Source: Hydrolagus affinis (Eukaryota). Taken from it: DNA of 64,000 bases. The position numbers were made by a program, and so were the translations under genes. The DNA is taken from assembly GCA_012026655.1 (NCBI GenBank), contig JAAILG010000303.1, positions 1 to 64,000 of the forward strand, written 5' to 3'. This document shows, in pieces, positions 28,401-52,790 of the stretch. Below the pieces are notes generated by a model, which was not told the origin of the DNA, did not search any database, and saw nothing but the letters and a program-made list of their open reading frames with translations. How positions within the stretch are numbered: the stretch's first letter is position 1; each line of letters begins with the position of its first letter.

Positions 28401-31400
28401 GAGAAAAGCTTGAATATGTTGCGTTCAGGACTATCCTCCCGTCCTTGTTGAAAGAGCTGCAGTGAGGCATGATTTGGGTCAGTTGCTCTGTCAGTGATGA
28501 GAGGAAAAATTCTAGTTTAATTTTGTTTGTTTAAAATAAAAGTTCCATCCTCTGCCAAATGTTTGTTTCTATAGCATTATTGAAAAAACATGGATCTGAA
28601 AGTTCTATGTTTAACACAAGAAATCTAAATTTCTCTGCTGTCTCTGGTCCATCAACCTCCTGGCTGCTCAGATTCAAACCTGTTGGTAACAGTTTGTGTA
28701 TTCTCCTTGACTATTCATTGGATTAAATATTTTAAGAGTTTTCACGGAATATAAAACAATTACTCATCTTGTATTTACAGAGCAGCACATCTCATTATAA
28801 TGCTGGAACATGGGGAATAGTGCAAGGACAACTAAGGCCTTTACTGGCACCACGGGTTTACACACTTCCAATGGTACGCTCCATAGGAAAGACGATGGTT
28901 CAAGGAAAAAATTATGGCCCACAGATCACCGTAAAAAGAATATCTACCAGGTATGTGACCATTTTATTTTTTGTGCAGCAGATAAATATATTAATGCAGG
29001 TTTTCACACAATATTGGAAAATTTATATCTTCAGAAAAATGAACATTAGAGTATATTGAGGGAGAAATACATTCAAAGGGCAGCAGTAAACTATGGTAAT
29101 ATCTTCATGAATCTTTATGCACCATTGTTTACTTGTTTAAGTGTTATAGCTTGTTAAAGTTGCAAATGGTTTGAAACGTTTGATGAAACAAGTTGGCTGT
29201 TGTTTCTATACACTTACTTTAGTTTAAAATGCAACTTTTCTCAGATCTTAGTATAGTATAGACTATGGAGCACAGATGCACAGTGTAACCTGCATTGAGA
29301 TTTTACTGTTTCATATGTACCGTTGTTGCTACCTGTGGGCAGAACATTGGGTAACAATGGGTTCATGGCAGCCAATTGCACACAGGAGTGTCCCACAAAC
29401 AGTCGTGGATTGAAGTGACCACTGAGCTACAGGACTCCATTGTTGCAGAAATTTTATTGGTTTGAGCCATTTTTGTGGGATCCACTTTCTTGCACTAAAA
29501 GCAAGAAATGTGCAAGCTTGGGAAAGTGCCATTACACAGTTTATAGTAGGCATGAGTTACCATCAGCTGAGAGACAGGGACATTTGTAAATAACACATTC
29601 CACATCATCCATGACCACCACCCAGAAGGATTATAGACAGAATGGAAAATGACCAGAACTCGTGTGCCTTTCTGACAACGCTTCCAGGAGGACTCATTGG
29701 CCTGTATTCTGAGAACAAGTAGCCTTAAGAGTTTTACCTTTTCATTTCATCTTTTTCTAGAGGCCGCAAGTGTAAGCCCATCTTTGTTCAGATTGCTAGA
29801 CAAGTGGTTAAGCTTAATGCCTCTGACCTTCGACTACCTTCACGCGCCTGGAAAGTGAAGCTGGTGGGTGAGGGTGCTGATGATGCTGGTGGAGTATTCG
29901 ATGATACTATCACAGAGATATGTCAGGTAACAAAAAATTATTTGGACTAAATTTACAGAAAGTCGGGATTACAGTTGGCTTGATTTTTGTAAATAGTAAG
30001 GGTTTTAAATGGAACTTGGTGGAATTTGGCAAATTACACAACCTAAGTTTTGTAGTTAGAAATGTTTGTGTTAGAGGATCCCTGAGTCTTGACTGTTAAA
30101 CTCTCTATTGTTGCATGTGCTTTGAGACCATAACTGCAGACAATACAATACAAAATGACATTTGTATAGGGCCTTTCACATTGGGAGGAGATGGCCCAGA
30201 ACACCATGAACACATCCTAGAGTGCTGCATTTAGTTCAACGGAGAAAGGTGCTTTTAGGAATTAAGCACATAGTCTGATCCAAGTATACTGAACTAAGTA
30301 TAGCTTAGTTCAAAATACTGTGAGTTCAGAGATAACTCATGAGAACCATGGATACGCTTATCAAAGTGTTGTGTGCTTGGTGCACCAAGCCATCGATGAC
30401 ATCCCCACAATAAATGCTCCCTGGAGCAGCTACTGCTCGAAGTCCACTGTCCTGTGCAAGTCATTCAGTTTGTGACTGCACTGTAACATAGGATCCCATT
30501 TTATGCACCCTCGCTCATTAAAACAGTCAGACTAGTTATGTGTTCATTCAAGTAACAGCATTTTTCTGTTTTATTATTTAAATTAACCAAATTACGCACT
30601 TTGATTCTATTTTAATGAACAGGAGCTTGAGATGGGGATAGTAGATCTGCTCATTCCTACACCAAACGTCACTGCTGAAGTAGGCTATAACCGAGACAGG
30701 CAAGTGTTATAGCTTCATTGGTTTAATAATGTACATTCTTCACATATACCAAATGCAGTATTATTATTTTTTATTATTAGACAGGATTTGTTTATTTTAA
30801 AAGCATTAATTAGCCATTCTTTCTGCGCTATCCCATGACATTTCTGTTAATTTTCTGCTGTTTTCATCAATAATCTCATGCTAATTAAATGAACTTTTTT
30901 TGTGCAGTTTCAAGATTTGATTTTGAGTATAGGCATGAGTTTATGTAAGTTTATTTTTAAAAAATTAAAAGTCACAGTAGAGAAATTAAAACCTGTTTGA
31001 TAATTCTGTTAGACTTACAAGCTTTTAATGAAATTCTAATTTTATTTTGACATAAAAAATTGTTGGAATATTTCTTTTTAAACAAGCATTTTTTCTGTCC
31101 TAGGTTCCTTCTCAACCCATCAGCTTGTTCAGAAGAGCATTACATGCAATTAAAATTTTTGGGAATTCTTATGGGTGTTGCCATTCGTACAAAGAAACCA
31201 TTGGACCTTCACTTAGCACCAATGGTCTGGAAGCAGCTCTGCTGTATTCCACTCTCCTTGGAAGATCTTGAGGAAGTCGATTTGCTTTATGTACAAACAT
31301 TGAACAGCATTCTTCACATTGAAGACAGTGGGATTTCAGAGGAGAATTTCCACGAGGTTAGTTGAATTAAATGTACCTTTTGGTATTTTGTACACAACGA

Positions 31401-34009
31401 GCTGTTTAATATGAAACAGTTACACTTAAGCATGATGATGGTTTTCCACATGTATTAGACACCCAGCGTGCAAAAGAAAAAGTGAAAAGCTTATTAGTGT
31501 TCTTGGTAAGACTGAATCGATAGCTGGAGAAAAACGAACTGCTGCTTTAACTAATGTGACAATCATATAATTGACCCAAACACAGTATATAAAAAAAAGG
31601 TATTCTTAATGTCAAACATTTCTCACCGAATGTATCCATTTTCAATCTATTTGTTTTATTTTAAAAGAGAACATGTCTTACCTCAAACTAATCAATGTGG
31701 AAGTGTTTTTTTTAAAGGAACGCTGAGAGGTAAAATAGGAGTTTTTTCCCTGCTTTTCAATGCACGAGCAAATGACTAACCTAGCCCACCACTATTCTAA
31801 CCGTTTGCTACCACACGTTCCTGAAAACATGCTCCCAATAAGGCCATTCAGTTCTGTATCTCTTCACAATGTTGGTGTAAATCTCTATATTACAAATGAA
31901 CGCTTATTCTTGCTAATATTTGTACAGACCATTGATTTTAAAAATTCACGTAAAATGATGTCCTGAAAAAGCTACCAATACTTTGCAAAGCTCTATATTA
32001 GAAGTTTTACTCAATGTACAACCTTACTAGTATGAAGAAATTAATAGTTGTTGAATATTTCAGATGATACCTCTCGATTCATTTGTGGGTCAAAGTGCTG
32101 ATGGTAAAATGGTTCCCATAATACCTGGAGGGAGCAGTATCCCACTAACCTTTTCTAATCGGAAGGAATATGTAGAGAGAGCAGTAGAGTACAGATTGTG
32201 TGAAATTGATCGTCAGGTGAGTAATTGTCACAATTGATCCCAATCAACAATTTAAACCTTTTTTGATTAATTAGACCAGAAATTGATTAAATAGAAGTTA
32301 AAAATAGACCAGGTTATGGAATTATTTTTTTTAAATCAATTGACCTAGGATTATAGGCTGCTGCCAGTATTTAATCCCACTCCCAGCCCCCATTATTCAG
32401 TTGGTAAAACCACTGAAGTGGTAAATCTCTATCATTTCAGAAATCACCAGCACTTATTAAGTTGCTGTAATCTCAGCCTCCATGGCATAGTGGAGAACCA
32501 TTGCCTTGAGACAAGGATGGGGAAGTTAGGTTTGCAAACAAACCTATAATTTACAGCCACATCTGATTTGCAAATGTTCCATTGGATCCCATACTTTGAA
32601 AACATTGAAGGGTTTTTATTTACTAACAAGCACAGTCTAGCTACAAGCTCCCAGTCATTTATGTTGCAGAGTTGAAGACAAGTCTACAATTCCATGTCTC
32701 TGCTAAATTGGTAAAAACAAAGTTGACTCTTGACTCCGTTCAGCCCAAGGCAAAGACTCCAGTCGTTCCCCACCACTGCAACATATTTTCATATTCTTTT
32801 TAGGATATTATTATTAACATATTTGTAATATCTGTGATATAAATAGAACTGTTTAGAGGTGGGGGCTCCTCAGTTTCCTTTCTCTGATGGAAAGTTTCCA
32901 GATAATGTTAAATATTTACTGGTTCAATAGGTGAAAGCTCTGCGGTTCACTGTGAAGGCAGCCTATGTAATTTTGGTTTCCTTGGTGGATAAAATAAACA
33001 TGTTATAGTCCTATTCAAAACTGGTTTCACTCTTAAGTATTTTCTTTCATGTTGATTCAGGTAGCTGCAGTACGAGAGGGAATGTCTTGGATCATCCCTG
33101 TTCCACTGCTTTCTTTACTTACTGCGAAACAGTTGGAACAGATGGTCTGTGGGATGCCAGAAATCTCTGTAGAAGTTCTGAAGAAAGTTGTGCGATATCG
33201 AGAGGTTGATGAACAGCATCAGCTGGTGCAGTGGTTCTGGCAGACACTGGAGGAATTCTCGAACGAAGAGAGAGTTTTTTTTATGCGTTTTGTGTCTGGA
33301 CGATCCCGTTTGCCAGCTAACACAGCAGACATTTCCCAGAGGTTTCAAATTATGAAGGTTGATAGGGTAAGAATTGTATATTTCTTCTACATATACTGAT
33401 CTGGAGACTGATTAGTTCTTTTACTCTATCTATTCTAAGATTAGGGTAGTTAATTCATACCATATTGCGATTCTTCCACTTGTAAGTGTTACTGTACAGC
33501 TGAACTTAAAAAAAAAACTATTCATTACCAATCTATTTTTAAACAAAGAAGCACGGGTGGAATAACTTGTTATATCAAGTTTTGAGTGAGTTTCAGTATG
33601 ATAATGGCCCTTTGCTATTCTAAGTAAGGCATAAATAACAATTTAATGAGAAATTTATATTTGGCACATCTATAATATTTTTAAATTTAATTCTACCAAT
33701 TTGGCATTATAAATATTGTCACCTGTAAGACTATCAAACCCAAGCACAGTAGACAGCTGACCAAATTCTAGGTTTTCTAAATGTTCTTCTGTGAACCAAT
33801 CTTCCTTGTTTTCCATTTTACAGCCTTACGACAGCTTGCCTACCTCACAAACTTGCTTCTTCCAACTGCGGCTCCCACCATATTCCAGCCAAGCAGTCAT
33901 GTCAGAACGGCTGCGCTACGCTATCAACAACTGTAGATCCATAGACATGGACAACTACATGCTTTCTCGTAATGTGGACAATGCAGAAGGCTCTGATACA
34001 GACTATTAA
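245..34009 (+). CDS. HERC1: E3 ubiquitin-protein ligase HERC1, 3' portion (5' end lies upstream of the window); 48 coding exons
   Basis: Spliced exons: 245-400, 698-804, 1184-1294, 1910-2086, 2261-2500, 2835-2918, 3121-3635, 5105-5901, 6841-7039, 7947-8107, 8360-8476, 9263-9494, 9586-9710, 10149-10369, 11042-11310, 11589-11641, 12364-12564, 12955-13129, 13863-14127, 14865-15078, 15531-15736, 16230-16357, 16460-16596, 16834-17034, 17231-17358, 17850-18049, 18521-18641, 19035-19181, 19768-19869, 21521-21694, 22343-22636, 23812-23877, 23968-24093, 24945-25083, 25184-25365, 25536-25691, 25953-26075, 26261-26363, 27079-27248, 27450-27588, 28024-28193, 28781-28950, 29761-29926, 30623-30699, 31104-31356, 32064-32216, 33061-33366, 33824-34009. 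Peptides match HERC1: SPRY ([23 protein letters not shown]), UBA-like ([11 protein letters not shown]), WD40 repeats, RCC1-like repeats ([12 protein letters not shown]), and HECT with catalytic [15 protein letters not shown], ending NAEGSDTDY*. Confidence 0.97.
4330..4748. mobile_element. Possible degenerate MITE (Tc1/mariner-pogo type)
   Basis: TA-flanked imperfect terminal inverted repeats: TA|CAGCGCAGCCCCATTTATAA ... TTATAATGGGGATGCCCA|TA. Confidence 0.3.
7166..7715 (-). mobile_element. L2 LINE 3' fragment
   Basis: Minus-strand peptide [14 protein letters not shown]...YLKTLLF (L2 ORF2 C-terminus) and the same L2 tail in reverse. Confidence 0.8.
11973..12042. repeat. 70-bp near-perfect palindrome/hairpin in a HERC1 intron
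   Basis: Arms 11973-12004 and 12011-12042 are reverse complements with 1 mismatch in 32 bp. Confidence 0.9.
13312..13440 (-). mobile_element. CR1 LINE 3'-end fragment
   Basis: ACATAGAAACAGGAATAGGTCATTCAACCCTTTGAGTCTG...CCATTCAATAACATCATGACTGATCT resembles the reverse of the CR1 3' UTR common in sharks; recognised from memory. Confidence 0.5.
14306..14662 (+). mobile_element. tRNA-derived SINE with L2-like tail
   Basis: Head GGAGCCCTGTAGCTTAGTGGTTAGAGCAC (pol III A-box), core TGTGGAACACTGCTGTGCACAATTGGCT, tail TCAAATGCAAGGATTATTATT; many related copies in the window. Confidence 0.8.
22655..22812 (-). mobile_element. Two tandem SINE 3'-tail fragments
   Basis: Two consecutive copies of (TAA)n-TCCTTGCATTT...GAGAC...CTCAAAG..CTTCA.AGA. 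Confidence 0.7.
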
Positions 34010-34421
34010 ATTTCTGTATGAACAAAATTCATTCTATTACCTGCACAGGGAAATGCCTTTGGTAATTCTAGTTGTAATAGTAACTTCTGCAAACGGCCAA
34101 TATTTTAATTGTATATGTACTTGAAGAAAACAAATGTGAAATGTTATTGTTTCTGATTTTGACTATTGGCAGGTTTAAAAAAAATACACTTTCCTCCCTG
34201 TTTTTGTTCATTTTCGATAAGTTTGCATGGAGATATTTTGATGCATATTTGGGAATGGTATAGATGACCCTCCCAGGTTTAGGAAAAATGTAAGTAAAAA
34301 AAATGTACATTGTGTATAATTGTTCATGAGGGAGAGAGCAATTTACATAAATATTCTTATATTTATTTTTGTTTTAATTTGAATTGCCTGTGCCGAGTTT
34401 CCTAACAGAACTACATCAAAG

Positions 34422-34427
34422 AATAAA
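34422..34427 (+). terminator. Probable HERC1 polyadenylation signal
   Basis: AATAAA about 410 nt after the TAA stop, followed by a T/GT-rich tract (ccatgtttatttgtc). Confidence 0.55.
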
Positions 34428-35173
34428 ATGCTAATTTAAAACCATGTTTATTTGTCAACTGGTACTTCAAACTGTCTGTGATATTTGACTGATTTAAAAT
34501 AGTTGTGGGAAGGATTATGTATATAAAAAATTCAAAGGCTTTATTACAACAACAACAACAACAAATTACATTTATAGAGCGCCTTTCACGTCGGGAAAGT
34601 TATTACTATATTTTGATTTAATGTCATTTTCTTGGATAGCTGTATGTATGGATAGACGCATTATTTTTGACAGGTTAGTTTGAATTGTTGTGAATTAAAA
34701 ACACATCTATTTGGCCAGGTTACATATTTGTTCTTCCTGGCCCACTGTTTTTGTTACCTGAAAAATAGCACGTTATTTAATATTTAACTTAACTTCTAAG
34801 TGGCCAAGTTCTGGTTTGAAACAGTTATTATCAGGGATGCACAAAGCTTCATCCTTGCTGTGCCCGATGGTGGGAATCTGATTCGTACAACACCCTTAAA
34901 ATACTTAATTTTGTAAGATTAATAATTTTCTTTGGTCATGGATCAAAAGAACTGCAACTTGTAGCCCTAGAAGAGTTGTATACATTACAGGAAAGACAAA
35001 ATTTGATTATATCTCCATTCTGCAAGCATTTTAAGCTGAATTTATGCAATAAGGAGCCAAGTCCCTTTGCCCTAATTCATAGTGATGTAAAGAATTTATG
35101 GCCCATTTAAAAAAAAGTAACCATATAAACAAATACTTATATATAATATAATTAACCTTGTGCAATATGATTG

Positions 35174-35179
35174 TTTATT
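35174..35179 (-). terminator. Candidate polyadenylation signal of the CIART-like gene
   Basis: TTTATT on + (AATAAA on -) about 800 nt after the stop; a second candidate is at 34540-34545. Confidence 0.4.
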
Positions 35180-35976
35180 AATGTACATCACTGCCAAATC
35201 ACTGGAATTTCCACCAGTCAACCAGCATTAAAGCAAATATGTCCCCTGTATTCCCATACCCCGATAAGAGCTATACAGTCATAAACTTGTTAAGCACATT
35301 GCATAAATATAGGCAAAAACATCATCTGCCACTTAATCTGTGATCATGAATATATTCCATTTACATGTTTAAATATATCAACAGTGAAACATCAGCAAGC
35401 AGTAAACGTGTATCTGCATACTGCTGTAAAAAGTCTAGATGTTTTCAAATTGGCATTGCAAAACAATTCCATTTACCAAGAATTCAGCTGTTTAAATGTC
35501 TTAAAATGTGCATTAACAGTCAAAATTATTTCTGCGTAAATGTGTTTTAATGTTATACATTATGCTCTTAAAGCTTACTATGCTACATATTCACCACTCA
35601 CTGCATTTCTGAGCACAAAATAATGAACAAGAGATGTACTTTAATCTGTGCAGTCCAAACCAGTACCCGTGATAAACTAGGTCAGTCGTGATAGTGTTAA
35701 ATTAGCATTCTGTGGTATTAATGGTGATGCCTTTGGCTTGGTCGTGCTCATGCATCCTGGTGGAGATCTATGAGAGTGGCCGTCAGCAAATGTTGCTTTT
35801 GCATAAAAGCAAATTCTACTTTGATTAGCTGGTTTCACCTGATCAGCATCCGTTCAAGTACTTACAGGATGATCAACAATTGTGAGTTTTTTTCCCCCCA
35901 CAAGGCTGATTTTCATAAAGCTCATTAGAAATAACGTTTTCCTTTGGAGTTGGTTTGTGGTATTGTATAGAATCCC

Positions 35977-38897
35977 TTATCTGGAGTTTTGCCGAGTTCC
36001 ACTTGTGATCCATCCTTTATCTTCAAAAGTTGTGCATTCAGTTCTTTTTATCTTCTTTACAATGTCATAACAACGTGCAGAATGCTGTGTAGCTGTTACA
36101 GTTTGGTCGTTCTTCTGCAAACAAAAATGGTAGTGTTCAGTGAAGCATTGTATTCAATACCACATGTGCAGTATCTAAAGGGGAAATACTATTAGGAAAA
36201 TATGAAAGGTCACAAAATGGAAATGATGCCAGGCCCCAATAGTCAGCCACAATCCCCAAATCCTTAAGGAATAGCAGAGACTAACCAAAATGTTCTAAAC
36301 GTCTTAAAAATAGATGTAATGCTAATAGACTTGAAGGTGCAAATGCGATACTAATGCTCAAGTTGGTGAGTGAGATCGATACAGTAAATGGAATTCTAGA
36401 TATTATAATTGGGTCAATGAATGCAAGTACATGTAACAGTTACACAGGATATTGTTTAGGTGGTTGTAATATTGTCAAGTATTCTAACTCCATTACAGAA
36501 ATGGCATGATTCTGCTGAGCTATACACATGTAATGTTATTTCTTACCTTGAATCGTTTATGATGAATTATCTCATTGAGAGAATCCTTACAGCCTGGAAC
36601 AGGAGCAACATTGGGAAACCAACCCTTCAACATCTGCTCCACCTGCAGCAAAATCGCTGTGTATTGTTCACTGCAAAAGAAAATCATTTGAATTAAGCAC
36701 ACAAGATAGCAACAGAAAGTTTTTAAGTGCAAGTTTTAGTATTAATTACAGTAAGAAATTGTGTTGGTTGAATAACATTGGGAGTATCATACAATATGAC
36801 ATTCTTTGATGGGTTCAACACTCACCATAGGCAATATGGGTACTACAGTAAACCTCACATCATAATAACAATGATCCATTTTATGTTGTTTCATCAGATT
36901 GACTAATCGTAAAGTATTGTGACTCCCAAGTATTTCCTGGCAAATGTTGGAAGTGGGATTTGCAACCTTCACGTGACAGGTCTCTGGTGAGGCAGCACAG
37001 TGCTAAGATTTGAAAAGTGCATCCATGGAAATAATGATGAGCGTGTACACCAAACATTTTAACACAGAACAAAAAGATTGCCAAAGCAGAGCAAACTAAG
37101 CTCAAATAGTTACCCCAATTTTCGATTCTGCAGAACTCCCATAATTCTCTGGATTCTGTCCATGGCAACACTTTCCTGGAAACTGGTCAAACCTACCAAG
37201 ATATATAAATAACCAGATGTTACGATTGCAAAATGTTGGCCTATCAACTATTGCACAATTAGGATTCAATGCGACTTGAGTTTTGAAGTTTATATACCTT
37301 TTCTGTACTTTCCAGACTTGAGGCCATTCAGCAGCAAGTTCAGAGGAGGAATGAAGCCCTGAAGTTCCCCACACTAAACACAGAAGAAAGAAATGTTAAG
37401 AATATGAACTATTCACCCTTTTAAGTTACTATACTCATATAAATTTATTTTGTGAAAAACAACTTGGCAAGGCTAAATAAAGGCCTAAATGTTTTTTTCT
37501 GGATGGAAAATAGAACTCATGCAAACGGGAGAGGGGAGGCTGACTTGTTGCTGCCGTAACTGGTCTTTCATCTCAAGGTGCTAAAATAGAAATCTCACCC
37601 AGGATGAAGAATATGTCATTCGCTCAAACAGCTGCAGTCTCCAAAACTAACAATAATTACCAGAAGTGATTTTATAGACATAAACCCCATTCTTATTAGA
37701 AGCCAAGTCTACAGCAAACAATTTGTATTGGTTTGTAACACTTGCTTGGAGGCTAAGGCAATCCAATCCCCTCCCCACCCATCCTGTACAATACAGTGGG
37801 TATACCCAGTAAACTGTGTAAACACTGTTGAGACATCCCCCTGAGATGAAAGGTGTTGTATAAATGTAAATTTCTGTTGTGTAAAATAATAATAACCCCT
37901 GGATTTGACGAAGGACCTCGTCACGTCATCGGGACGGATCAAAGCCCTTCACTGTGAAGTGTAATGACTATACATTTTGTGGGCAAACACAGCTGCGAAT
38001 GTGGACACACCAATGATCCATAAACATCTATGAAGTGAGTGACCAATTTTATTTGGGGAATTGCTCTCCAGGACACCAGGATTAACTCCCTTCTCTTTTA
38101 AAATAATGCCATGGAATCTTGAATGTTGTCCACTTGAATTGCCAGACTCGGGTTTATCGAATCGTGTTACACAAGTTAGCCTTCTAAACCGACTGTAAAA
38201 TGCCAATAACATATTTTTCAGTCACAGACAACAAAATGTAAGCAATGTTCAGCTTGAACTTCAATATCTGATTTTGCTTTTAGTAACCCTTAAAATAATG
38301 AATCCTAGTGAATTTTACCTTTTGGGCAAAGATGATGTCCCCTTCAGACATTGCACTGAAGTCTTCTGTTGCCATTTTTAATTCTTCCTTTTCTCTTTTC
38401 CTTTTAATTGGCAGGATTGTTTTAGTAAAGGAATTGTCAATGGCACAGAGTCCTGGAAGACATACGGTAGCATCTTCGCACATTTTGTTGGAACTCACTG
38501 CAGATGCCATGATACTGCTCTGAAAGGATGCCTGATTACTCAGTGTTTCGATTAAAAGGTCACTTCTGGAAGAATAACTGCATTCTAAAAGATCTTTATC
38601 CATGGGGACAGTGGATTCACTAACACCAGAGGCATTCGATGCTGATGGAAGCGGCTGCAGTGCATGGATGTTTTTTCTCTCCGCTGCCTTGATGTTTGTT
38701 TTAAGATTTTCTTGAGATTCAAAATCTCTGGAAGAGTATGCAAAGGAGCCATGCATTACTGAGGACAGCTCACATTTTACTTCACTCTCAGAATAAAATA
38801 TTTCACTTCCTTCATCGTCACTTGTAAACCAGTCTGTTGAATAATCAGACTCACCAGGGGATATGCTGCTGTCTGGAAGTTCTACCACCAAATGCAT
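35977..38897 (-). CDS. CIART: Circadian-associated repressor of transcription (CIART/CHRONO)-like protein, about 331 aa, 5 coding exons
   Basis: Minus-strand exons: 38897-38319 (GCC-ATG; MHLVVELPDSSISPGESDYSTDWFTSDDEG...MSEGDIIFAQK), 37373-37298 (CGELQGFIPPLNLLLNGLKSGKYRK), 37192-37114 (GLTSFQESVAMDRIQRIMGVLQNRKLG), 36670-36547 (EQYTAILLQVEQMLKGWFPNVAP...KRFK) and 36114-35977 (KNDQ...RQNSR*). All introns are GT-AG with compatible phases. The joined core matches the human CIART domain as I recall it (EGDLLFAQKCKELQGFIPPL..LLNGLK.GR...GLSSFQQSVAMDRIQRIVGVLQ....LLQVEGMLKTWFP). The last exon is less certain, and the gene may be a paralogue rather than the orthologue. Confidence 0.88.
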
Positions 38898-39461
38898 GGC
38901 TGTTTTCTGAAATGCAATGCAATGCATTAGACACTGAGTTATCAAGGTTCATGTAATAAATCACTAATAGATGCTCATTAATTTAACTGATGAGCACACG
39001 ATTCTCCTGTAATTTTAATAGTGTCCAGTTTAATCCTTTCTTAAGAATCTAAACGCAATGCTGTTTAATTCCTGAATGATCTATTTAAAAACCAAGGGTC
39101 ATTTTACTGCTTGTAACTCATAAAATAGACATTTAATTAAAAATATATCCGCCGGTGAAAGAAACGATACAGTGATGATGAACACGGGACACTTTCAGAA
39201 AGATTATCCCAACACTAATCCCAAATATTATCTCTTTCTGCCTCCAGAATCACACTTCAATACATTGAATATCTCGGGGGAGGGGGGGGGGAATAAACGG
39301 AGGTTAAAAAAAAGCCTTTTTTTAAACTTTTTTTAAAAAAAACAATGTATTAATTTTATGCATAAAGACTTGCCAAACTTACAATTTGTTAATATCGACA
39401 TGGATGATCTGAAAATACACACACACACACACACACACACACAGGGAGAAAGAAAGAATCC

Positions 39462-39600
39462 AGAAAACACAAAATACTACAGATGCTGGGAATCTGAAAC
39501 ACAAACAGAAGTTGCCGGGGAAACTCAGCAGGTCAGGCAGCATCCATGGAGAAAAGGAAACAGTCAACGTTTCGGGTTTACAACTCTTCCTCAGGACAGA
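39462..39600 (+). mobile_element. Interspersed repeat fragment of a type common in cartilaginous fish
   Basis: TACTACAGATGCTGGGAATCTGAAAC...CTCAGCAGGTCAGGCAGCATCCATGGAG...AACGTTTCGGG resembles an abundant shark repeat; family assignment uncertain. Confidence 0.4.
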
Positions 39601-39813
39601 AAGAATCCACGTCGGTCTCACCAGAACATCAGAGTGTGTACACACTAATATACAGTGTGTACGGTGTCCAGGCAGGCTGGGCTGGGGGGGAGGGGGGGGG
39701 GTTTGCTGTTAGTTCTATGGCAGACACACAGCAAACTAAATGCCAGAAGTTATTTTGGTTTTTTTGGCGAACACAGGTGACTGTTTGCCCCCCGAATAAC
39801 ACAGGGACCTCAC

Positions 39814-39950
39814 CTGGCAACCGAGTTAAGCGAGTAACGCAGCTCCTGGTCTCTCTCTCACTGCAATGAGCTGCTATCACTGTGTGTGACACTGGCTCTG
39901 GAGACACAGAGAGAGACACACACACACACTGGACTCACTCACTAACACGG
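39814..39950 (-). other. Putative non-coding first exon of the CIART-like gene
   Basis: Minus-strand donor CAG|GTGAGG at 39814/39813, just downstream of the promoter motifs; acceptor TTTCAG| at 38907/38906 lies 9 nt before the ATG. The 5' boundary is approximate. Confidence 0.5.
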
Positions 39951-39954
39951 GCTC

Positions 39955-40095
39955 GCAACTCGTGCAGCCGCCCCCAGGGCAACGTGTGGGGGCGGGCTCT
40001 CCGCACCGATTGGACCCGCCCACATCTGCGGTAGGCAGCCAATGGCCGTGGAGGTATCGCCAGAGTCCTCGCTCTGATTGGGTCGGGAGGACAAT
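39955..40095 (-). promoter_or_regulatory. CpG-rich proximal promoter of the CIART-like gene (E'-box, CCAAT boxes, GC boxes)
   Basis: On -: CACGTT (39981-39986) and CACGAG (39959-39964). GC boxes at 39968-39973, 39989-39996 and 40015-40021. CCAAT/ATTGG at 40009-40013, 40039-40043 and 40077-40081. Local CpG enrichment in an otherwise CpG-poor window. Confidence 0.7.
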
Positions 40096-40109
40096 GGCAA
40101 GTGATGCAA

Positions 40110-40230
40110 GTGTGTGTGTAGTGTTAAAGTGTGTGTGTGTGTAGTCTGTGTTAATGAGTGTTTGTGTGTGTGTGAGTGAGCCTGTGTTAGTGATAGTGTG
40201 TGTGTGTGTGAGTGTTTGTGTGTGTGTGTG
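40110..40230. repeat. Interrupted (GT)n microsatellite tract
   Basis: Seen directly. Other microsatellites: (ATCA)n 19899-19929, (TG)n(GA)n 25403-25431, (AC)n 39416-39442, (AG)n 40753-40771. Confidence 0.85.
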
Positions 40231-40854
40231 ACTCTATGGAGACATGTGGAGTTATTGTACTTTCTCCAGGAAAGTAACAAATGTTGCGGCGTCAAAACAG
40301 CTGAACCCCAACACTGTCATGACAGCTGCTGTTAATGTCTGGGACAGTGTGTGTGTGTGTGGTGCTGGGGGGGGTGGGGGGGGATACATGGGATTCAGAC
40401 TCAGAGACAGACAATCTGTCACATTGGCAGTTACAGTTCATTGGCACAGGGATGGAGTAAGAAACGATTTGCGTTTTTTCGTTTAAAAAAATACCCCCCC
40501 AAACAAAGGCTACGCAAAAATATGTATATACTGTACTGTATAATATATATTTAATGGAAGCAACTGCTACTTGGAAAAAAGGGTTGCGTTTGTTTGGGTT
40601 ATTTGTGCTGTTAAGTTTCTCAATTGAACACCTCACACGCCCTGCTTTGACTTGGAACATTGAATTCAGTTACACCGAGCACCCAAGGTTTCCTTTCCAT
40701 CCCTGCCCGCAGCTGATCCTACATTGGTAAATGAGCGTTTTAAGATCCAACACAGAGAGAGAGAGAGAGAGAAACAGAAACTGAAGTGCAGTCAGTAGTG
40801 GCCACTGCAGAAAACTTCAGTTTACCCAGCGGATTAGACTTCAGACTGACTGAC

Positions 40855-41250
40855 TTGAGCGCCTCCCTCCCCCTCCCTCCCGCCCTTCCTGTGTCTGATC
40901 AATGGCTAAGGTGTGGAGGGCAACGTGACAAGAGAGCCGCACAGTGTGTGGCTAAACACGTGGCTGGGTACCGCTGAAAGTCGGTTTGTTTTTCTTGTCT
41001 ATAAATAAAGTTGCCAGAGCAACCCTGGGGTAAACACTCTCTCGCGGTCCTTACGTTCCCCGCGCGTAGCCCTCTCGGCAGGTGTTTCGACGTGCGATTT
41101 GCTAAAACGATTCAGTGTTTTTCTTCGAAGCTGTTTCGGAAACGTGCCTTTGGGTTGCCATTTTCACTCAATCCCCGAAGAAAGTTTTCGCGTCGACTAA
41201 CAGTGACTGACCCACTCTTGTTTTACTTGCTCTCGTTATCCAATTGGTGA
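40855..41250. promoter_or_regulatory. Second CpG-rich, E-box-containing regulatory element upstream of the CIART-like gene
   Basis: CACGTG at 40957-40962, AACGTG at 40922-40927 and 41141-41146, a GC box near 40879, TATAAATA at 41000-41007, and many CpGs. Confidence 0.55.
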
Positions 41251-42212
41251 GAGATGTACATGTTTTGGCGGGAGAACAACACAATAAAATAGACGCAATG
41301 GGATCTAAATTGAGACTGGTAATAATGAATTATTGTACGAATTTGCCAGCCATGCCTCACCCACAAGATCCAGTCAGTTCACATTACAATACATTCTGCG
41401 AGGCGCTCAGACGCCTGGACGACATGTTAAGACACCATTTCAAATGCACACATAATTACTATTCACACATAAACACCTAATGAACGTAACGTTTATTCTG
41501 ATCTGTGTTTTTTGGGGGAGTATCTTGAATCATTTTTCTTTCTCCATGATACAATGGATCGCCTTTGACCAAAATTTAACACGGCAAGTCTCAAATCCGG
41601 CTGACATTACACTGCACTCCTGAAAGATATTTAGTTGGAGGTTAGAAAAATGTGAGCTGCAGATAATACATGTTATGACAAGTATTTCAGATGTATTTTC
41701 GCCCACATACACACAGTCAGTTCACTTTACAGTATATTCTATGAAGCGCTTTGAGACGTCTAGAAGACGTGACAAGCGCTATATAAAATGCAAGGATTAG
41801 GATTATTATTATTATAAATCTGTTCCTCAGTTAGTGCTTAATTTCCCTACATTTGCATTGCCATGTTTTCTGGTTCTACATACAGTACTAATCTGCCTAC
41901 AAATCTCTACATAGCAGAGTCGTCGTAAAGGCCTCTGAGATGTTCAAAGTTATTGGCACTAAAACAATGCAATATTATTACATAAATAATATTCAGCCCT
42001 AGAAAATTTCTCAAACTGGGATCTAGGCCAAGATTAAGAAAATTGGTTTGTAAGTCTTTTTCAAATAGGAGGTACATGCAGTAATAGGCAGATTAGTATG
42101 TATGTAGAGTGAGAAAACGGCAATGTGCTTAACTTGTAATCGTACATTTTAAAAAGGAAATAAATAATGTTTCAGAATGGAAGCAGATCACAAAATAACC
42201 ACTGCAGAATTT

Positions 42213-43037: not shown

Positions 43038-44527
43038 AATGCGTATTTACTGCTAAATATTAAAAAAAACACTTTCAATTCCTCCACATCCTGATAGGGC
43101 TCCAGTACTGGAACAACAATTAAACTGAGGTGGTTATATCAGCAGTAGCTGTACTGCTATGTACAAGCCACCTTACAGTGCTGCTAATCCTTCTACCTCC
43201 TCCTCACCAAGTCAGCACCTCACCACCCCCACATTCCCCCAAGCATCCTCCAAAACATCAGACTCTCTCCCCCAGAGCACTGTACAGGACCCTAACCTCC
43301 CCGCTACCAGCCACATGTTTTGATTACGAAAGCTTCCAATCTTCCCCTGAATAAAATGAACATCAGAAAGCTGTTGCCCTAGACAACCACGTTTATATAA
43401 AAAAACAATGTCATCATAAACAACGTTAACAATGTCACCGCAAACAACCACAGCATTTAAATTGAACTGAAATGTGCAGTTGTTATCTAAGATAGACAGT
43501 ATGCTTCATGACTACTAATCCTAAATTAAGAGTTGTTCACACAAACTTGCTAACATGAGGAACACTGACAAGCAAAGAAAGCAGGAGCATATCTATACAG
43601 TTGATTCGGGCAATGGGGGGAGAGCAGATGGCTGTCTAATGTAATTCAATACAGTATTTACAGATTAGAGCTAATACAGATAACTGCACTTTAACAACAC
43701 AAGATCTAATGACCTTCTGGAACAGTTTTACAGAGAAGACTCGTGCTAAAGCTTGTGCTTATACAATAACAACAACAACAACAAAATTACATTTCTAGAG
43801 CGACTTTCACGTCAGGAGGACAGTCCCAGAAACATCATCATACAACAATAAAACATGCCTTTTTATCAAGGTGAGTTTATGCCCATTCATGTAATAAACA
43901 GGCATTATTAGATGTGTCTAAACATGTTTTAAATCTTGTTATGTGATTGTAAATTAAGTTTGTGTATGCTTATGGACGGCTTCTCCTTCAACGGTCTAAC
44001 AGTTATTCGTTTAAGGAGAGTTTTGCCTTCTGTTATACCAAGGCTGTATTGTTTTATACTCTGCTCTCCTAGAGCTCTATACTGTATGTGAGGGCCAGCA
44101 ATAACAGTCACTAACTCCATTTGGGATGCCAGCGTGGCACAGAAAAGATGGATGAAATAGCTGCCTGCGTTAAATAAATCCAGGTGTGGTCCTGCCAATG
44201 AACCCGTGAAGGCACGACCTGCGGAAGGAACCGCCAGCCTTTGCAGACTGTAAGCCTGCAGGTTTCAATCCTGATTTATATATACAGGTAGTGGATTAAG
44301 AGGTGGAAATAAGATACTGCTTTCTCTTGGTGAAGTGAGAATCAGACTCGACTTGTGTTGACTCTCATGGTCAAATAGCCAAAGCTACGTGTGAATCAAT
44401 AGCGACACGGCAAGATATTAGAAGATACCCATTGAACCATAACCCATAGAATAAAAAGGCAAGAGCTTCAGGAGGCTGCAGAGAAAATTGTCAAGTGAAG
44501 TGGGGGAAAAAACCTTTGGGTGGGGTG

Positions 44528-44828
44528 ATAATAATAATCCTTGCATTTGATATAGCACTTTTCATGTCTTGTAGATGTCTCAAAGTTCTTCACAGAATAT
44601 ACTGTAAAGTGAATTGACTGTATATATGCAGGCAAAATGCGGCAGCCAATTGCACACAGCAGTGTCTCACAAACAGTCGTGGATTGAAATGACCAATTTT
44701 TTTTGCGAGGGATTATTATTAGGCATGTGGAGTAAGGAAATTTACCCAAGGTTTCATCCTGCCTGAAACTGAACCCAGGTCTCTCACTTGTAAGGCGAGT
44801 GCTCTAACCACTGAGCTACAGGAATCCA
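44528..44828 (-). mobile_element. Full-length tRNA-derived SINE
   Basis: On -: head TGTAGCTCAGTGGTTAGAGCACTCGCCTTACAAGTGAGAGACCTGGGTTCAG (A and B boxes), then core and tail. Confidence 0.85.
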
Positions 44829-47800: not shown

Positions 47801-48679
47801 TCCTTGCATTTGGTACAGTGCCTTTCACGTCAGGAGGACTTCTCAATGCCCTTCACAAGATTTACTGTGAAGTGGAGTGACTGTGTATTTGAAGTCCTCA
47901 TGTGGGTCATTAACCCACAATCTGCTACTGTAATTACTTTCAAACTGATCCAGGCTGACACACAGTACTCATGGAACAGCCAAGGGAAGCCCACTATGCC
48001 TCTATTTGCAGAACATATTTTGAAAATGAATGCAAATATTCACCATGAAATATATAATAAAATAAGGATTTTAATAAGAAATCCATCCACCCTACGAAGC
48101 GTTGCTTAAAAATTACCCAAGCAACTGTAACCATTGAAGCACAAATTAAATCAGTTCAGGTGGCCTTTGCTCTAATTTTCCAAAGCAAGCTGTTTGTGCC
48201 CTATTCAACCTAGCTCTCAAAACCCCTGAGAGAGGCAAAGTACATTAGTGTGCTGTATTTTGAGGACAAACACAAGGTGGCACTGAATGGTGGTTGTGTG
48301 CTCACATCCCTCATCTGTTTGGTTCCATCATTGAGCCCATGGGGACAATGACTAGTTATATCTCGCCTCCCCCACCACATATACACATATAAACAGTCCC
48401 CGGTTCCCCATGCGCTGTTGCCACTCATCTCTTCATTGCCTGTCCGCAGAGCAATATGCCCAAATTACAGCAACAGGCAAAGGGAGAGAACATGTTTTCT
48501 TGTACAAATGTTCCCTTCTTTCCTTCGAAGGAGGTGACTTTGTGCCGCATGTCACCTGGACGGGCGAGAGCTGGTTAAGTTGCCTCGGCCGTTGTGAGTT
48601 GCTCTCAGATTCTCAGTTAGACGTGTTGCCATGTGCTCAGGAATGAAATTTTTTTGAAATGGCCATTCATTCTGAAACT

Positions 48680-48872
48680 TGCTCCCTCAATCCCTTCGCC
48701 TCGCCCCCTCCTTTTCCATTTTCAGGACGCGCCTGAAGACTGTTCTGTTCGACTGCGCCTGCGGTCACCTTCCCCCTCCCACTCGCTCGGTCCCAGGCTC
48801 CGCTATTGTGAAGCGCTCTGAGACATCGTCTGGCGTGGAGGGCGCTATATAAATGCAGGTTGTTTTTGTTGC
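48680..48872 (+). mobile_element. L2 LINE 3' end
   Basis: ...CTGAAGACTGTTCTGTTCGAC... followed by TGTGAAGCGCTCTGAGACATCGTCTGGCGTGGAGGGCGCTATATAAATGCAGGTTGTT. Confidence 0.75.
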
Positions 48873-50641: not shown

Positions 50642-52790
50642 TTACAGTCGTTTCTTCATTCCTCTCCACAAACTGTCTGTTCCTTCTGGTTTATTATCAG
50701 GGATCATACCAGCACTTCTCTCTGCGCTAACAAACAGGGAACAACACTTCTCTCTGATCATTTGGAGGCCTCCTTGCGTGATATTTCGACAAAAATCCAC
50801 GTGCAGCATTCGTAAATTTCTTCCGTGGATCGTGACTGCTTCCAAGGTCTTGTCAGTCATTCTTACACAGTTTTCTAATTTTAACGCTTTCAGTTTGGTG
50901 CATTTTTGAAGGATTTGTATAATGCAGTAGTCTGTGACATGTCCGCATCCAGAGAGGGTCAATGACACCAAATTTGGACACCTGGAAAACAAATGCACGT
51001 TAATAAGAATATCATTTACAGATAGAATATTAACCCAGCGCAGGAGCAGTTCTGACCACTGGAAACCCTCGGGAACAATAATGATTGGACATTGGATTTA
51101 ATGTTTATCTGGAATTATCAATTATGCGTGTGAGCACTGTGACACCTCACCTCGCAGAATCACAAGAAACAGCACCAGGCCCCGATAAACCAAGGAGCTT
51201 CACTCTAACTGAGCAAATGAGTGTCCAGTCTGAGAATTAACAACAACAACAAACCACAACAAAATTACATTTGTATTGCACTTATCACTTCCCAAGGCAC
51301 TGGACAATCAGTGGGGTGGGTGAGGCAGGATACGTGAAGCAGGCCAGAGCCCGCTGAGCGGAGGGAGAGGGCAAGTTGATAGGGGGTTAGGAGGTCACGG
51401 GGGTAAGTGGGAGCGAGGCCATGGAGGGTTTTGAATGTGAGAACCAGGATCTTGAACTGTATCCTCTGTGTGATGGGAAGCCAGTGGAGTCGGGCGATGA
51501 CGGGGTTGATGGGTTGCGGGAGAGGACACGGGCTGCAGAGTTCTGGATGGTCTGCAGCCTACGGAAGGAAGATTTGGAGAGGCTGTCAAGCAGGAGGTTG
51601 CCTAGTCAAACCTGGATGTTATGAATGCATGTGTGAGGGTCTTGGAGGCCTGCGGTGCGAGACAAGTTTCATCTTATTTCTCCGTATTCTTGTGTTCTAA
51701 TGGAACATCTGACATGTACAAGTGCAATACCTTTTCTTTTTAACATTACCAATGATCCCAATTGACCTCAGTTATGTATCGTTCAGTGGGTTCATAGATT
51801 GCCTGCAGTGGTATCACACACGTCTCCATCACCAAGTCTGCAATAAATCTACTTCAGTATTTATTCCTGTTCAGTTCAGCAAGATACCAGGCTGAGTTAG
51901 CCAGCTTGGTTCTTGTGACCAAGAACAGATTTATAGCAATCATAAGATGGTTATCAAGCAGTCCTGAATGTGGATCTGTTTTCTTTGAACTGTAAAATGA
52001 GAACTTTTGCCACTACATTAATAGCTTTCTATTCCTTAGAAATGGAATCAGGCCTTTGTTAACTACTTTACCGCTGAAATCAAAACAAGAGGAAAATAAT
52101 GATAGAATTATTAGTGCCTGTGGTGCCTGTAATATTTCTTCTCTTTATTCCACTGAGTGAATATTTTACTACTAATAATAATCCTTGCAGTTGATACAGT
52201 ACATTGTCACTTCATTGAGACATCTCAAAGCTCTTTATAGAATATTTTGTTAATTATTATTATTATTTTGTAAAGTTCAGTGACTGTATTTTGTGGGCAA
52301 TTATTATAGAATTAAATATTGATTGATTTAAATATTGCAGCAGCCAATTACACACAGCAATGTCCCACAAACAATTTTTTACATTACTTGTTTCACATAA
52401 ATCAAATGTGGTTGAAATAAGACCTGTCCAAATAGAATCAAAACCTTCAACCAACCTGTTACTTATTTGATTCAAGAAGTTATTGGTGATATTTTCGTGC
52501 TTGCTGCAGATGTCTCTCTGAAAGTTACTTTTCATCCAGTCTTCAATGTTGCAGATTTTCACTCGGCTCGAGTACCAGCAGATAGATAAGGACCGTAACA
52601 TGGGACTCAGCAGAAAATTATCTTTCCTCAGTTCTGAGGGGGAAGAGAAATTCAGCAAAGACCACAGCGCTGGGTCCAGGAACACGTCACGAAGTTTGTG
52701 ACAGGTCAGAGATATACTCTTTCTCGTCTCTTTGTCCAGAAACGAAAATATATGAAGCAAACACTCGTGATTTAATTCTGTTAGCTGCAT
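50642..52790 (-). CDS. FBXL22: F-box and leucine-rich repeat protein 22, 224 aa, 2 coding exons
   Basis: Exon 52790-52456 ([21 protein letters not shown]..., F-box; [18 protein letters not shown]) joins through a phase-2 GT-AG intron to exon 50981-50642 ([18 protein letters not shown]...LENCVRMTD...HVDFCRNIT, LRRs). The position between USP3 and HERC1 matches human synteny. Confidence 0.95.
51237..51640 (-). mobile_element. L2 LINE 3' fragment in the FBXL22 intron
   Basis: Similar to 7166-7715 (GCAGAGGGAGAGGGCA.GTTG.TAGGG.GTTAGGAGGTC; CAGGATCTTGAA; GCAGAGTTCTGGATG). Confidence 0.75.

What the first reader, a model, noticed from the sequence alone, without database searches (positions are those of the whole stretch)
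35977..38897. A CIART/CHRONO-family clock repressor between FBXL22 and HERC1: probable paralogue lost in mammals
Seen: an intact 5-exon ORF of about 331 aa, whose diagnostic core is split over small exons (76, 79 and 124 nt) largely missed by the ORF track. Established: CIART/CHRONO represses CLOCK:BMAL1 by binding BMAL1. Human CIART lies at 1q21 beside APH1A and CA14, while USP3-FBXL22-HERC1 lies at 15q22 beside the paralogues CA12 and APH1B, with no CIART known to me there. Inference: this is the sister copy from vertebrate genome duplication, i.e. a second, uncharacterised CHRONO-type negative feedback arm of the clock in early jawed vertebrates.
Basis: partly seen in the sequence, partly recalled or inferred. 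Interest (0 to 1): 0.8.

Follow-up and report, generated by a model that had tools for sequence, protein, structure and literature searches.

The report
Fish-type second CIART clock gene
This is a real, expressed gene for a relative of the mammalian clock repressor CIART/CHRONO: it belongs to a second, fish-type copy (called ciartb in bony fishes) that sits beside FBXL22 and is not seen in land vertebrates, and here it is shortened to little more than its conserved helical core.

Summary
A five-exon gene of 331 codons lies on the minus strand at 35977-38897. RNA reads cross all four predicted introns at the predicted bases. Exons 2, 3 and 4 each hit Pfam Ciart separately and in order.

It is not the mammalian-type CIART. 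Family trees give two clades (100/96 support). Clade A holds all 13 tetrapod rows plus one coelacanth, one gar and some teleost copies. Clade B holds the second coelacanth and gar copies, all 9 rows that NCBI names ciartb, and the Callorhinchus orthologue of this gene.

Clade-B and chimaera genes share a contig with FBXL22 in 13 of 15 species, against 0 of 2 for clade A. So this is the orthologue of fish ciartb, kept at an ancient locus.

The unrooted tree cannot separate a genome-duplication origin from a pro-orthologue. I could not test whether this genome has a second CIART.

The protein keeps 27 of 27 family-invariant residues and the three-helix bundle that binds the BMAL1 activation domain in CHRONO. 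It lacks the C-terminal motifs of all other members. This is modest novelty: a new, truncated member of a known family.

The parts
38319..38897 (-). Coding exon 1 (ATG at 38897; 193 codons). It holds an acidic Ser/Asp-rich N-terminus with an SDxSxDW[FL] motif, a KRKREK basic cluster, and the start of helix 1.
   Evidence: ORF and translation. 144 of 196 aligned positions identical to Callorhinchus LOC103188008. RNA depth 20-28 in X3 and junction 37373>38319.
37298..37373 (-). Exon 2 (76 nt), helix 1 of the conserved bundle.
   Evidence: Pfam Ciart profile 32-55, E 2.3e-5. 24 of 25 identical to Callorhinchus. RNA junctions on both sides.
37114..37192 (-). Exon 3 (79 nt), helix 2 (FQESVAMDRIQRI...).
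   Evidence: Pfam Ciart profile 59-80, 32.6 bits, above the cut-off of 27. 22 of 25 identical to Callorhinchus. RNA junctions on both sides.
36547..36670 (-). Exon 4 (124 nt), helix 3 (..LLQVE.MLK.WFP) plus a linker.
   Evidence: Pfam Ciart profile 84-106, E 6.3e-5. 33 of 41 identical to Callorhinchus. RNA junctions on both sides.
35977..36114 (-). Exon 5, coding part (45 codons plus TAA). This is a poorly conserved tail that ends 6 codons after a degenerate 'GWITSG' version of the family's W..PIC motif.
   Evidence: 29 of 43 identical to Callorhinchus. After GWITSG the Callorhinchus tail is found in the window's other two frames in turn. RNA reads show no indel here at depth 29-42.
35155..35976 (-). 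3' untranslated region (the end is approximate), with AATAAA at 35179-35174.
   Evidence: RNA depth continues to the bin 35135-35301 and is 0 below it. Poly(A) signal read.
38898..38907 (-). Short leader before the ATG, preceded by a possible splice acceptor (tttcag). An in-frame upstream ATG lies at 38927.
   Evidence: Sequence. Callorhinchus isoform X1 (P0243) joins an upstream exon at the matching ..KTAMH.. point. No RNA junction was listed here (reads were laid only up to 39300).
40751..41500 (-). Candidate promoter (inferred). It is a CpG-rich block with CACGTG at 40957 and CACGTT-type sites at 40922 and 41141.
   Evidence: CpG observed/expected 0.84-1.16 against 0.3-0.56 nearby. Sequence. 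No RNA was laid here, and E-boxes are not enriched in the window as a whole (7 found against 4.8 expected).
50642..52790 (-). Neighbour FBXL22 (two coding exons), the linkage marker.
   Evidence: F-box and LRR Pfam hits. 91% identity to Callorhinchus FBXL22.
31060..33399 (+). Last HECT-domain exons of the convergent neighbour, taken to be HERC1.
   Evidence: Pfam HECT, E 7.5e-25 and 2.6e-12. Opposite-strand RNA at 34300-34466. The name HERC1 was not tested.

Best explanation
This is the orthologue, in a chimaera-like cartilaginous fish, of the FBXL22-linked CIART paralogue that bony fishes carry as ciartb. That copy is distinct from the CIART/CHRONO of mammals and is not seen in tetrapods.

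Shown: the gene is transcribed from the minus strand, spliced into five exons and polyadenylated near 35155.

Its 331-residue product has four parts:
- a disordered acidic N-terminus;
- a KRKREK basic cluster;
- a three-helix bundle coded by the end of exon 1 and exons 2-4;
- a short, fast-evolving tail.

Inferred mechanism: the bundle matches residues 112-196 of human CHRONO, the core of its minimal repressive domain. It would bind the C-terminal transactivation domain of BMAL1, compete there with CBP/p300 and CRY, and so damp CLOCK:BMAL1 transcription.

The protein lacks everything that aligns with the distal C-terminus, the region that binds PER2 in human CHRONO. It also lacks the two C-terminal motifs kept by all other clade-B proteins. 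It probably works on BMAL1 only.
For: - Gene reality: four exact RNA junctions and zero intron depth.
- Family: exon-wise Pfam Ciart hits. The Callorhinchus orthologue P0001/P0242 scores 143 bits. 27 of 27 columns that are invariant across 100 family members are kept, read exon by exon against alignment A2.
- Constraint pattern against Callorhinchus: exon 2 24/25, exon 3 22/25, exon 4 33/41, against exon 1 144/196 and exon 5 29/43.
- Clade: A against the rest has 100/96 support, and bony-fish B against the rest 97/85. All 13 tetrapod rows are in A, and all 9 rows that NCBI names ciartb are in B.
Locus tags are adjacent or next-but-one in Scortum, Lucifuga and Channa. The match is 0 of 2 for clade A.
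- Fold: AlphaFold2 of Callorhinchus P0242 gives helices 188-216, 225-243 and 249-265 at pLDDT above 90, with the rest disordered.
- Function of the matching human region: minimal repressive domain 101-245, helical bundle 112-196, binding to the BMAL1 TAD, and the C-terminus 216-384 binding PER2 (bioRxiv 10.1101/2022.10.04.510902: abstract and sections 5 and 9).
Against: - No binding, repression or rhythmicity was tested for this protein.
- Yang et al. found that human 111-196 alone, and 111-262, did not repress, while 111-264 did (PMC7177903, section 18). The 262/264 boundary falls inside the TWIHTTPIC motif, which starts at 259 in P0006. Here that motif is degenerate (GWITSG) and is followed by a stop.
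- Two nearly invariant residues are changed in the window: R218 to K and P245 to R in P0242 numbering.
- The human NLS (residues 59-71; passages of PMC11599456) is not conserved.
- There is no E-box in the 400 bases upstream of the ATG.
- The tree does not root the family, so membership of clade B rests on linkage.
- All RNA comes from one sample, and most of it from one run (X3).
Confidence: 0.75

Rival explanations
1. Pro-orthologue. Cartilaginous fishes have a single CIART at the ancestral FBXL22-HERC1 site. The A/B duplication happened only in the stem of bony vertebrates, so this gene is co-orthologous to both mammalian CIART and fish ciartb.
For: - The chimaera sequence joins exactly on the A-B branch, so (chimaera,(A,B)) is the same unrooted tree.
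- Its core is as similar to A (about 61-63% to mammal, turtle and coelacanth A) as to B.
- Its N-terminus carries both the B-type SDxSxDW motif and the A-type F.SDSE.E motif.
- No second Callorhinchus or shark CIART appears among the 120 listed hits.
- It needs no gene loss in cartilaginous fishes.
Against: - Mammalian CIART lies at 1q21 beside APH1A and CA14, and FBXL22-HERC1 lies at 15q22 beside APH1B and CA12. These regions are classical duplication-derived paralogons. This is recalled, not tested here.
- A later single-gene copy landing in just that paralogous region would be a coincidence.
- Only 120 of 286 hits were visible, so absence of an A copy in cartilaginous fishes is not shown.
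Confidence: 0.2
2. Translocated orthologue of mammalian CIART. The chimaera gene is the A-type copy that moved next to FBXL22.
For: The unrooted tree allows it. The ELQGFIPPL stretch is identical to the mammalian one.
Against: - The same FBXL22 linkage holds for clade B in coelacanth and 11 teleosts, and not for clade A (0 of 2).
- This reading would need an independent move to the very site that the other paralogue occupies.
- B-type residues (KSG.Y, FQES, RI[MIL]G, WFPN) and the DW[FL] N-terminal motif are shared with B.
Confidence: 0.04
3. An expressed but functionally decaying or re-purposed gene. After losing its C-terminal modules, the protein no longer represses CLOCK:BMAL1. It may be neutral, or it may act only as a decoy.
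For: - Pfam coverage is 3-107 of 278, against 4-180 in other B proteins and 1-278 in orang-utan CIART (P0006).
- The QDNxVSSSTD and PPxGKINAPCLERLLKS motifs are lost.
- After GWITSG the Callorhinchus tail aligns to the window's other two frames in turn.
- P245 is changed to R at a nearly invariant loop residue.
- The RNA sample differs from the window by two amino-acid-changing bases within six codons of exon 5 (36069 and 36083).
- Human 111-262 does not repress.
Against: - The open frame is intact and splicing is exact.
- 27 of 27 invariant residues are kept.
- Exons 2-4 are 80-96% identical to a distant chimaera, while the flanks drift. That is the signature of selection on the bundle.
- Crosby et al. 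found 101-245 sufficient to repress.
Confidence: 0.15

Closest known systems
Teleost ciartb and the clade-B CIART of gar, bowfin, sturgeon and paddlefish, and coelacanth LOC102347843
   Same: - Same linkage to FBXL22 (13 of 15 species).
- Same side of the 100/96 branch.
- Same N-terminal SDxSxDW[FL]xS[DE]D motif, and KSG.Y, FQES and WFPN residues in the bundle.
   Different: - The chimaera proteins stop matching the family profile at position 107, against about 180 in the others.
- They lack the QDNxVSSSTD and PPxGKINAPCLERLLKSTESII motifs.
- They keep only a degenerate W..C motif.
- The window's protein is shorter still: 331 aa against 370 aa for Callorhinchus isoform X2.
Mammalian CIART / CHRONO (Gm129, C1orf51), Pfam PF15673
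   Same: - The same three-helix core, which in human CHRONO is the heart of the minimal repressive domain that binds the BMAL1 TAD.
- All family-invariant residues are kept.
   Different: - The other paralogue clade and a different chromosomal neighbourhood (orang-utan CIART and FBXL22 lie on different contigs).
- No counterpart of the mapped NLS at 59-71.
- No counterpart of most of the PER2-binding C-terminus 216-384.
Callorhinchus milii LOC103188008 ('uncharacterized protein')
   Same: Direct orthologue. It has the same five-exon layout when mapped by tblastn, lies on the same scaffold as FBXL22 (7,602,344 bp), and is 73% identical (144/196 aligned positions) in exon 1 and 80-96% in exons 2-4.
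   Different: After GWITSG the Callorhinchus tail aligns to the window's other two frames in turn. The window's product therefore ends 6 codons later, while Callorhinchus models run on for about 44 residues (370 aa; an older model has 428).

Membership tests
CIART/CHRONO family (Pfam PF15673) | Significant match to the Ciart profile. | tested here: met
   Exons 2, 3 and 4 were searched separately: 24.3, 32.6 and 22.9 bits, in order at profile 32-55, 59-80 and 84-106. Exon 3 alone passes the cut-off of 27. The natural Callorhinchus orthologue scores 142.8 bits.
CIART/CHRONO family (Pfam PF15673) | Residues invariant across the family. | tested here: met
   27 of 27 invariant columns of the 100-sequence alignment A2 are kept. 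G248 is the codon split across the RNA-confirmed exon 3/4 junction. Two nearly invariant residues differ: R218K and P245R.
CIART/CHRONO family (Pfam PF15673) | Helical bundle matching human residues 112-196. | tested here: met
   AlphaFold2 on Callorhinchus P0242 with alignment A2 gives three helices, 188-265, at pLDDT above 90. This is carried over to the window through 80-96% identity in exons 2-4. The window's own spliced protein was not folded.
CIART/CHRONO family (Pfam PF15673) | C-terminal half of the domain (profile 107-278, including the W.H..PIC motif and the PER2-binding region). | tested here: not met
   Profile coverage ends at 107 in both Callorhinchus models. Exon 5 gave no Ciart hit. 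Only GWITSG remains of the motif.
CIART/CHRONO family (Pfam PF15673) | Binds the BMAL1 TAD and represses CLOCK:BMAL1. | not testable with these tools
   Known for human CHRONO from the papers read.
CIART/CHRONO family (Pfam PF15673) | Clock-controlled (E-box driven, rhythmic) expression. | tested here: inconclusive
   One intronic CACGTG lies at 36970. An E-box and E'-box cluster lies in a CpG-rich block 2 kb upstream. Window-wide there is no enrichment (7 against 4.8 expected; 24 of 100 shuffles reach 7). There is no time series.
Clade B (fish ciartb type) | Linkage to FBXL22. | tested here: met
   In the window the ATG lies 11.7 kb from the FBXL22 stop. Contig lengths are equal in 13 of 15 species.
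Clade B (fish ciartb type) | Falls within the clade in a tree. | tested here: inconclusive
   It lies on the B side of the 100/96 branch but outside bony-fish B (97/85). That is on the internode, and the tree is unrooted.
Clade B (fish ciartb type) | C-terminal motifs QDNxVSSSTD and PPxGKINAPCLERLLKSTESII. | tested here: not met
   Absent from Callorhinchus and from all three frames downstream of exon 5 in the window.
Pair of ohnologues from the vertebrate genome duplications | Both copies are older than the split of ray-finned and lobe-finned fishes. | tested here: met
   Gar (P0038 in A, P0071 in B) and coelacanth (P0013 in A, P0005 in B) each have both copies.
Pair of ohnologues from the vertebrate genome duplications | Both copies present in, or older than, cartilaginous fishes, and lying in paralogous chromosome blocks. 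| not testable with these tools
The 1q21/15q22 paralogy is recalled. Paper searches for it found nothing usable.

The most novel reading that the evidence does not exclude
The names ciarta and ciartb in teleosts hide a split that predates bony vertebrates and probably stems from the two vertebrate genome duplications. The B copy was then lost in the tetrapod line. Chimaeras may carry only this B copy, naturally trimmed to a basic cluster plus the three-helix BMAL1-binding bundle. That would make it a natural 'minimal CHRONO' that separates BMAL1 repression from PER2 binding.
Probability: 0.35. Interest if true: 0.5.

Novelty: new member of a known kind. Interest (0 to 1): 0.36.

Why it matters
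CHRONO is usually treated as a single, mammal-centred clock component. These data show two ancient CIART lineages. The non-mammalian one is held at a fixed locus beside FBXL22 from chimaeras to teleosts.

That corrects the impression given by the a/b names that the fish copies are teleost-specific duplicates. It also tells fish chronobiologists which copy is comparable to the mammalian gene.

The chimaera version is a natural deletion series. Selection has kept the helical bundle and let the rest go. This agrees with the mapping of the minimal repressive domain, and offers a compact protein for binding and structural work with the BMAL1 activation domain.

Tried and rejected
- Exon 1 against the 5.8-billion-cluster protein index: 102 candidates, none at E of 0.001 or better. 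The length window excluded the 370-438 aa Callorhinchus models.
- Exon 1 against 1.84 billion representatives: 2 hits. P0001 is the orthologue. P0002 is a repetitive low-complexity protein (31% identity, six stretches) and was set aside as spurious.
- A second CIART-like locus in the window: tblastn of 120 family proteins gave 22 matches with E below 1 outside 35000-39500. The best was E 0.02 and none was credible.
- P0051, a Logan transcript of unknown organism, was considered as a possible cartilaginous-fish A copy. It groups with the coelacanth and tetrapod A copies (91/69). It is about 36-40% identical to turtle, coelacanth and frog proteins. The Atlas gave only 'Chordata'. It therefore gives no evidence either way.
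- An AU test was not run. Chimaera-with-A, chimaera-with-B and chimaera-outside are one and the same unrooted topology, so no such test could tell them apart.
- Fold search of the model against PDB: no match at E of 0.001 or better (best 0.81). The sequence search of PDB gave nothing.
- Naming the HECT gene: PDB holds no HERC1, the best match was HECTD3, and the large 5148-5921 ORF gave nothing. The name HERC1 stays untested.
- Paper searches for the evolution of ciart paralogues and for the APH1A/APH1B and CA12/CA14 paralogy returned listings only, and no listed title or abstract dealt with either question. I therefore claim only that these five searches found no such paper. Supplementary tables of ohnologue papers were closed and might list these pairs.
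- The search of earlier findings returned nothing.
Full report
**1. What is there**

On the minus strand an ATG at 38897 opens a 193-codon exon that ends at a GT donor (last exon base 38319). Four further exons follow: 37373-37298 (76 nt), 37192-37114 (79 nt), 36670-36547 (124 nt) and 36114-35977. All have AG/GT borders and compatible phases. The total is 996 nt, or 331 codons and a TAA.

Each exon was searched alone, and natural database proteins were used wherever a full-length sequence was needed.

**2. It is transcribed and spliced exactly so**

Three poly(A) RNA runs of one sample (X2-X4, raw reads) were laid on 34300-39300. Four junctions were reported that fit a GT..AG intron on the minus strand, and they are the four predicted ones:
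- 36114>36547: X3 21 reads, 18 start points.
- 36670>37114: X3 20 reads, 17 start points.
- 37190>37296, with the cut placed +2, which is 37192>37298: X3 9 reads.
- 37373>38319: X3 21 reads.

X2 gave 2, 1, 2 and 4 reads, and X4 gave 1, 0, 0 and 0. RNA depth is 0 in the clean intron bins.

Depth continues past the stop to the bin 35135-35301. An AATAAA sits at 35179-35174, so the 3' UTR is about 820 nt.

First mates lie on the + strand over this gene and on the - strand over 34300-34466. That fits convergent transcription with the HECT gene.

All RNA evidence is from one sample, and most of it from one run. X1 is a DNA-like contig set of a close relative, with 71 differing letters in 3461.

**3. 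Family**

Exons 2, 3 and 4 each hit Pfam Ciart on their own, in order along the profile. Exons 1 and 5 do not.

Exon 1 found nothing in the indexed search. In the exhaustive search it found Callorhinchus milii LOC103188008, listed as 'uncharacterized protein' (P0001; E 1.3e-80).

That protein maps by tblastn onto all five exons of the window. It also retrieved 286 relatives. The 120 listed all carry PF15673.

Identity to Callorhinchus, exon by exon:

| Exon | Identical / aligned |
|---|---|
| 1 | 144/196 |
| 2 | 24/25 |
| 3 | 22/25 |
| 4 | 33/41 |
| 5 | 29/43 |

Selection is therefore concentrated on exons 2-4. All 27 columns that are invariant in a 100-sequence family alignment are kept. Two nearly invariant residues differ, R218K and P245R in P0242 numbering.

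**4. Which CIART**

Three trees were built:
- 60 hand-picked rows, quick method.
- 116 of the 120 rows, quick method, leaving out three mammalian isoforms (P0007, P0009, P0026) and a sheep fusion model (P0014).
- 43 hand-picked rows, careful method.

All three give the same two clades.

Clade A (100/96) holds:
- every tetrapod row: 13 of 13 (3 mammals, 2 turtles, 8 frogs);
- coelacanth LOC102357995;
- gar 'ciarta';
- a minority of teleost proteins.

The other side holds:
- coelacanth LOC102347843;
- the gar 380-aa protein;
- bowfin, paddlefish and sturgeon proteins;
- most teleost proteins, including all 9 rows that NCBI names ciartb;
- Callorhinchus.

Gar and coelacanth each have one copy in each clade. 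The split is therefore older than bony vertebrates and is not a teleost duplication.

Callorhinchus attaches outside bony-fish B (97/85), which is exactly on the A-B internode, and on a long branch (1.69). With three groups meeting at one node, three readings are the same unrooted tree: member of B, member of A, and outgroup to both. The tree alone cannot decide between them, and I say so plainly.

**5. Linkage decides orthology**

I therefore used the length of the longest contig, reported for each protein, as a chromosome fingerprint. I compared the CIART list with an FBXL22 search seeded from the window's own FBXL22 exon.

For chimaera and clade-B genes the two lengths are identical in 13 of 15 species that have both values:
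- Callorhinchus
- Latimeria
- Sphaeramia
- Channa
- Scortum
- Lucifuga (a 214,899-bp contig)
- Cololabis
- Siganus
- Melanotaenia
- Xyrichtys
- Embiotoca
- Scophthalmus
- Aulostomus

The two misses are Acipenser, a polyploid, and Diretmus, where the CIART fragment sits on an 11.5-kb contig.

Locus tags are adjacent in Scortum (023911/023912) and Lucifuga (00216070/00216080), and two apart in Channa (012499/012501).

For clade A the lengths differ in both testable cases: coelacanth A, and orang-utan CIART against FBXL22.

The clade assignment of these teleost proteins was checked. The window's gene, 11.7 kb from FBXL22, is therefore positionally orthologous to fish ciartb.

**6. Origin**

I also recall these, and I recall that these regions are classical paralogons (for example the TPM, MEF2 and NTRK families).

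None of that could be tested here. The only supporting data are the sheep MRPS21-CIART fusion model and the separate orang-utan contigs.

I put a duplication-derived pair at roughly 0.75, and the pro-orthologue alternative at 0.2.

Whether this genome also has an A-type gene is unknown. No Callorhinchus or shark A-type protein is among the 120 listed hits, but 166 further hits were not shown.

**7. Anatomy and likely mechanism**

AlphaFold2 on the Callorhinchus protein, with the family alignment, predicts a confident three-helix bundle (188-216, 225-243, 249-265; pLDDT above 90). Everything else is predicted to be disordered. In the window, helix 1 is the end of exon 1 plus exon 2, helix 2 is exon 3, and helix 3 is exon 4.

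This region aligns with human CHRONO 112-196. The papers report the following for the human protein:
- Crosby et al. report that 101-245 is a minimal repressive domain. [quoted passage not shown] The C-terminus, 216-384, binds PER2 (abstract and sections 5 and 9).
- Yang et al. found 111-264 sufficient, but not 111-196 or 111-262 (section 18).

The 262/264 boundary lies inside the conserved TWIHTTPIC motif. In the window that motif is reduced to GWITSG, followed by six codons and a stop.

Family-profile coverage ends at position 107 in the chimaera. It reaches about 180 in other B proteins and 278 in the orang-utan CIART P0006, which has the human length of 385 aa.

The two C-terminal motifs shared by all other B proteins are absent.

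Downstream of GWITSG the Callorhinchus tail can be followed only by changing frame three times in the window. The RNA sample differs from the window by two amino-acid-changing bases within six codons of exon 5. The tail is drifting.

The mapped human NLS (59-71; passages of PMC11599456) is not conserved. A KRKREK cluster just before helix 1, at the family's nearly invariant KR, is my inferred substitute.

My reading is a BMAL1-TAD-binding repressor without the PER2 arm. The identity of the gene is well supported. The mechanism is inferred.

**8. Regulation**

There is no E-box within 400 bases upstream of the ATG. One CACGTG lies in intron 3, at 36970.

A CpG-rich block at 40751-41500 carries CACGTG (40957) and two CACGTT-type sites (40922, 41141).

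A possible acceptor lies just upstream of the ATG. Callorhinchus isoform X1 joins an upstream exon at the same point. Together these suggest a non-coding first exon there.

E-boxes are not enriched window-wide, and I had no read call left. This remains a lead.

**9. Known or new**

The family and the fish copy are known. Teleost genes are named ciartb or CIART. Zebrafish ciartb is reported to peak at ZT0 in testis (passage of PMC11884735). It is also reported to move with other clock genes (passage of PMC5397488).

The Callorhinchus and coelacanth genes are labelled only 'uncharacterized'. My five searches found no paper on the age or linkage of the two lineages (listings only). Supplements were closed.

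The finding is real and tidy, but it is a new, truncated member of a known kind.

Noticed in passing
window 37807-38140 (intron 1): A high-copy interspersed repeat. The summed contig word depth in X1 reaches 92,240 against about 53 nearby. RNA reads lie on both strands, and there are many loose ends at 38018-38084.
   Followed up: no
window 36069, 36070, 36083 (exon 5): In runs X2-X4, every RNA read that covers these bases (30 of 30, 30 of 30 and 30 of 30 in X3), and also the X1 contig, differ from the window. Two of the three changes alter amino acids (Y to H, H to R). X1 also lacks 2 bases at 36086, which the RNA does not (0 of 32). The tail of the protein varies within or between very close lineages.
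   Followed up: partly
window 44468-44749, 46456-46800, 53780-54061; also 48667-48957 and 53757-54398: Pairs of similar long ORFs (MGKFPYSTCLII.. and ..LRALHN.G....RGRGK..) recur between the CIART-like gene and FBXL22, and inside the FBXL22 region. They are probably copies of a dispersed repeat or transposon.
   Followed up: no
window 39400-40300: A (CA)n run and GC-rich His/Thr-coding low-complexity sequence lie on both strands just upstream of the gene.
   Followed up: no
window 34300-34466: RNA of the opposite orientation (first mates on the - strand, depth up to 18.7) marks the 3' end of the HECT gene. The two convergent transcripts end about 700 bases apart.
   Followed up: no
proteins P0001, P0242-P0245 (Callorhinchus LOC103188008): Public models of the Callorhinchus gene disagree at both ends (370, 372, 398, 428 and 438 aa). 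The 428 and 438 aa models read about 100 residues through sequence that, in the window, is 3' UTR in several frames.
   Followed up: partly
proteins P0008 and P0038: Database naming is inconsistent. UniRef calls the medaka clade-B protein 'repressor of transcription a', while NCBI's gar 'ciarta' is in clade A.
   Followed up: partly
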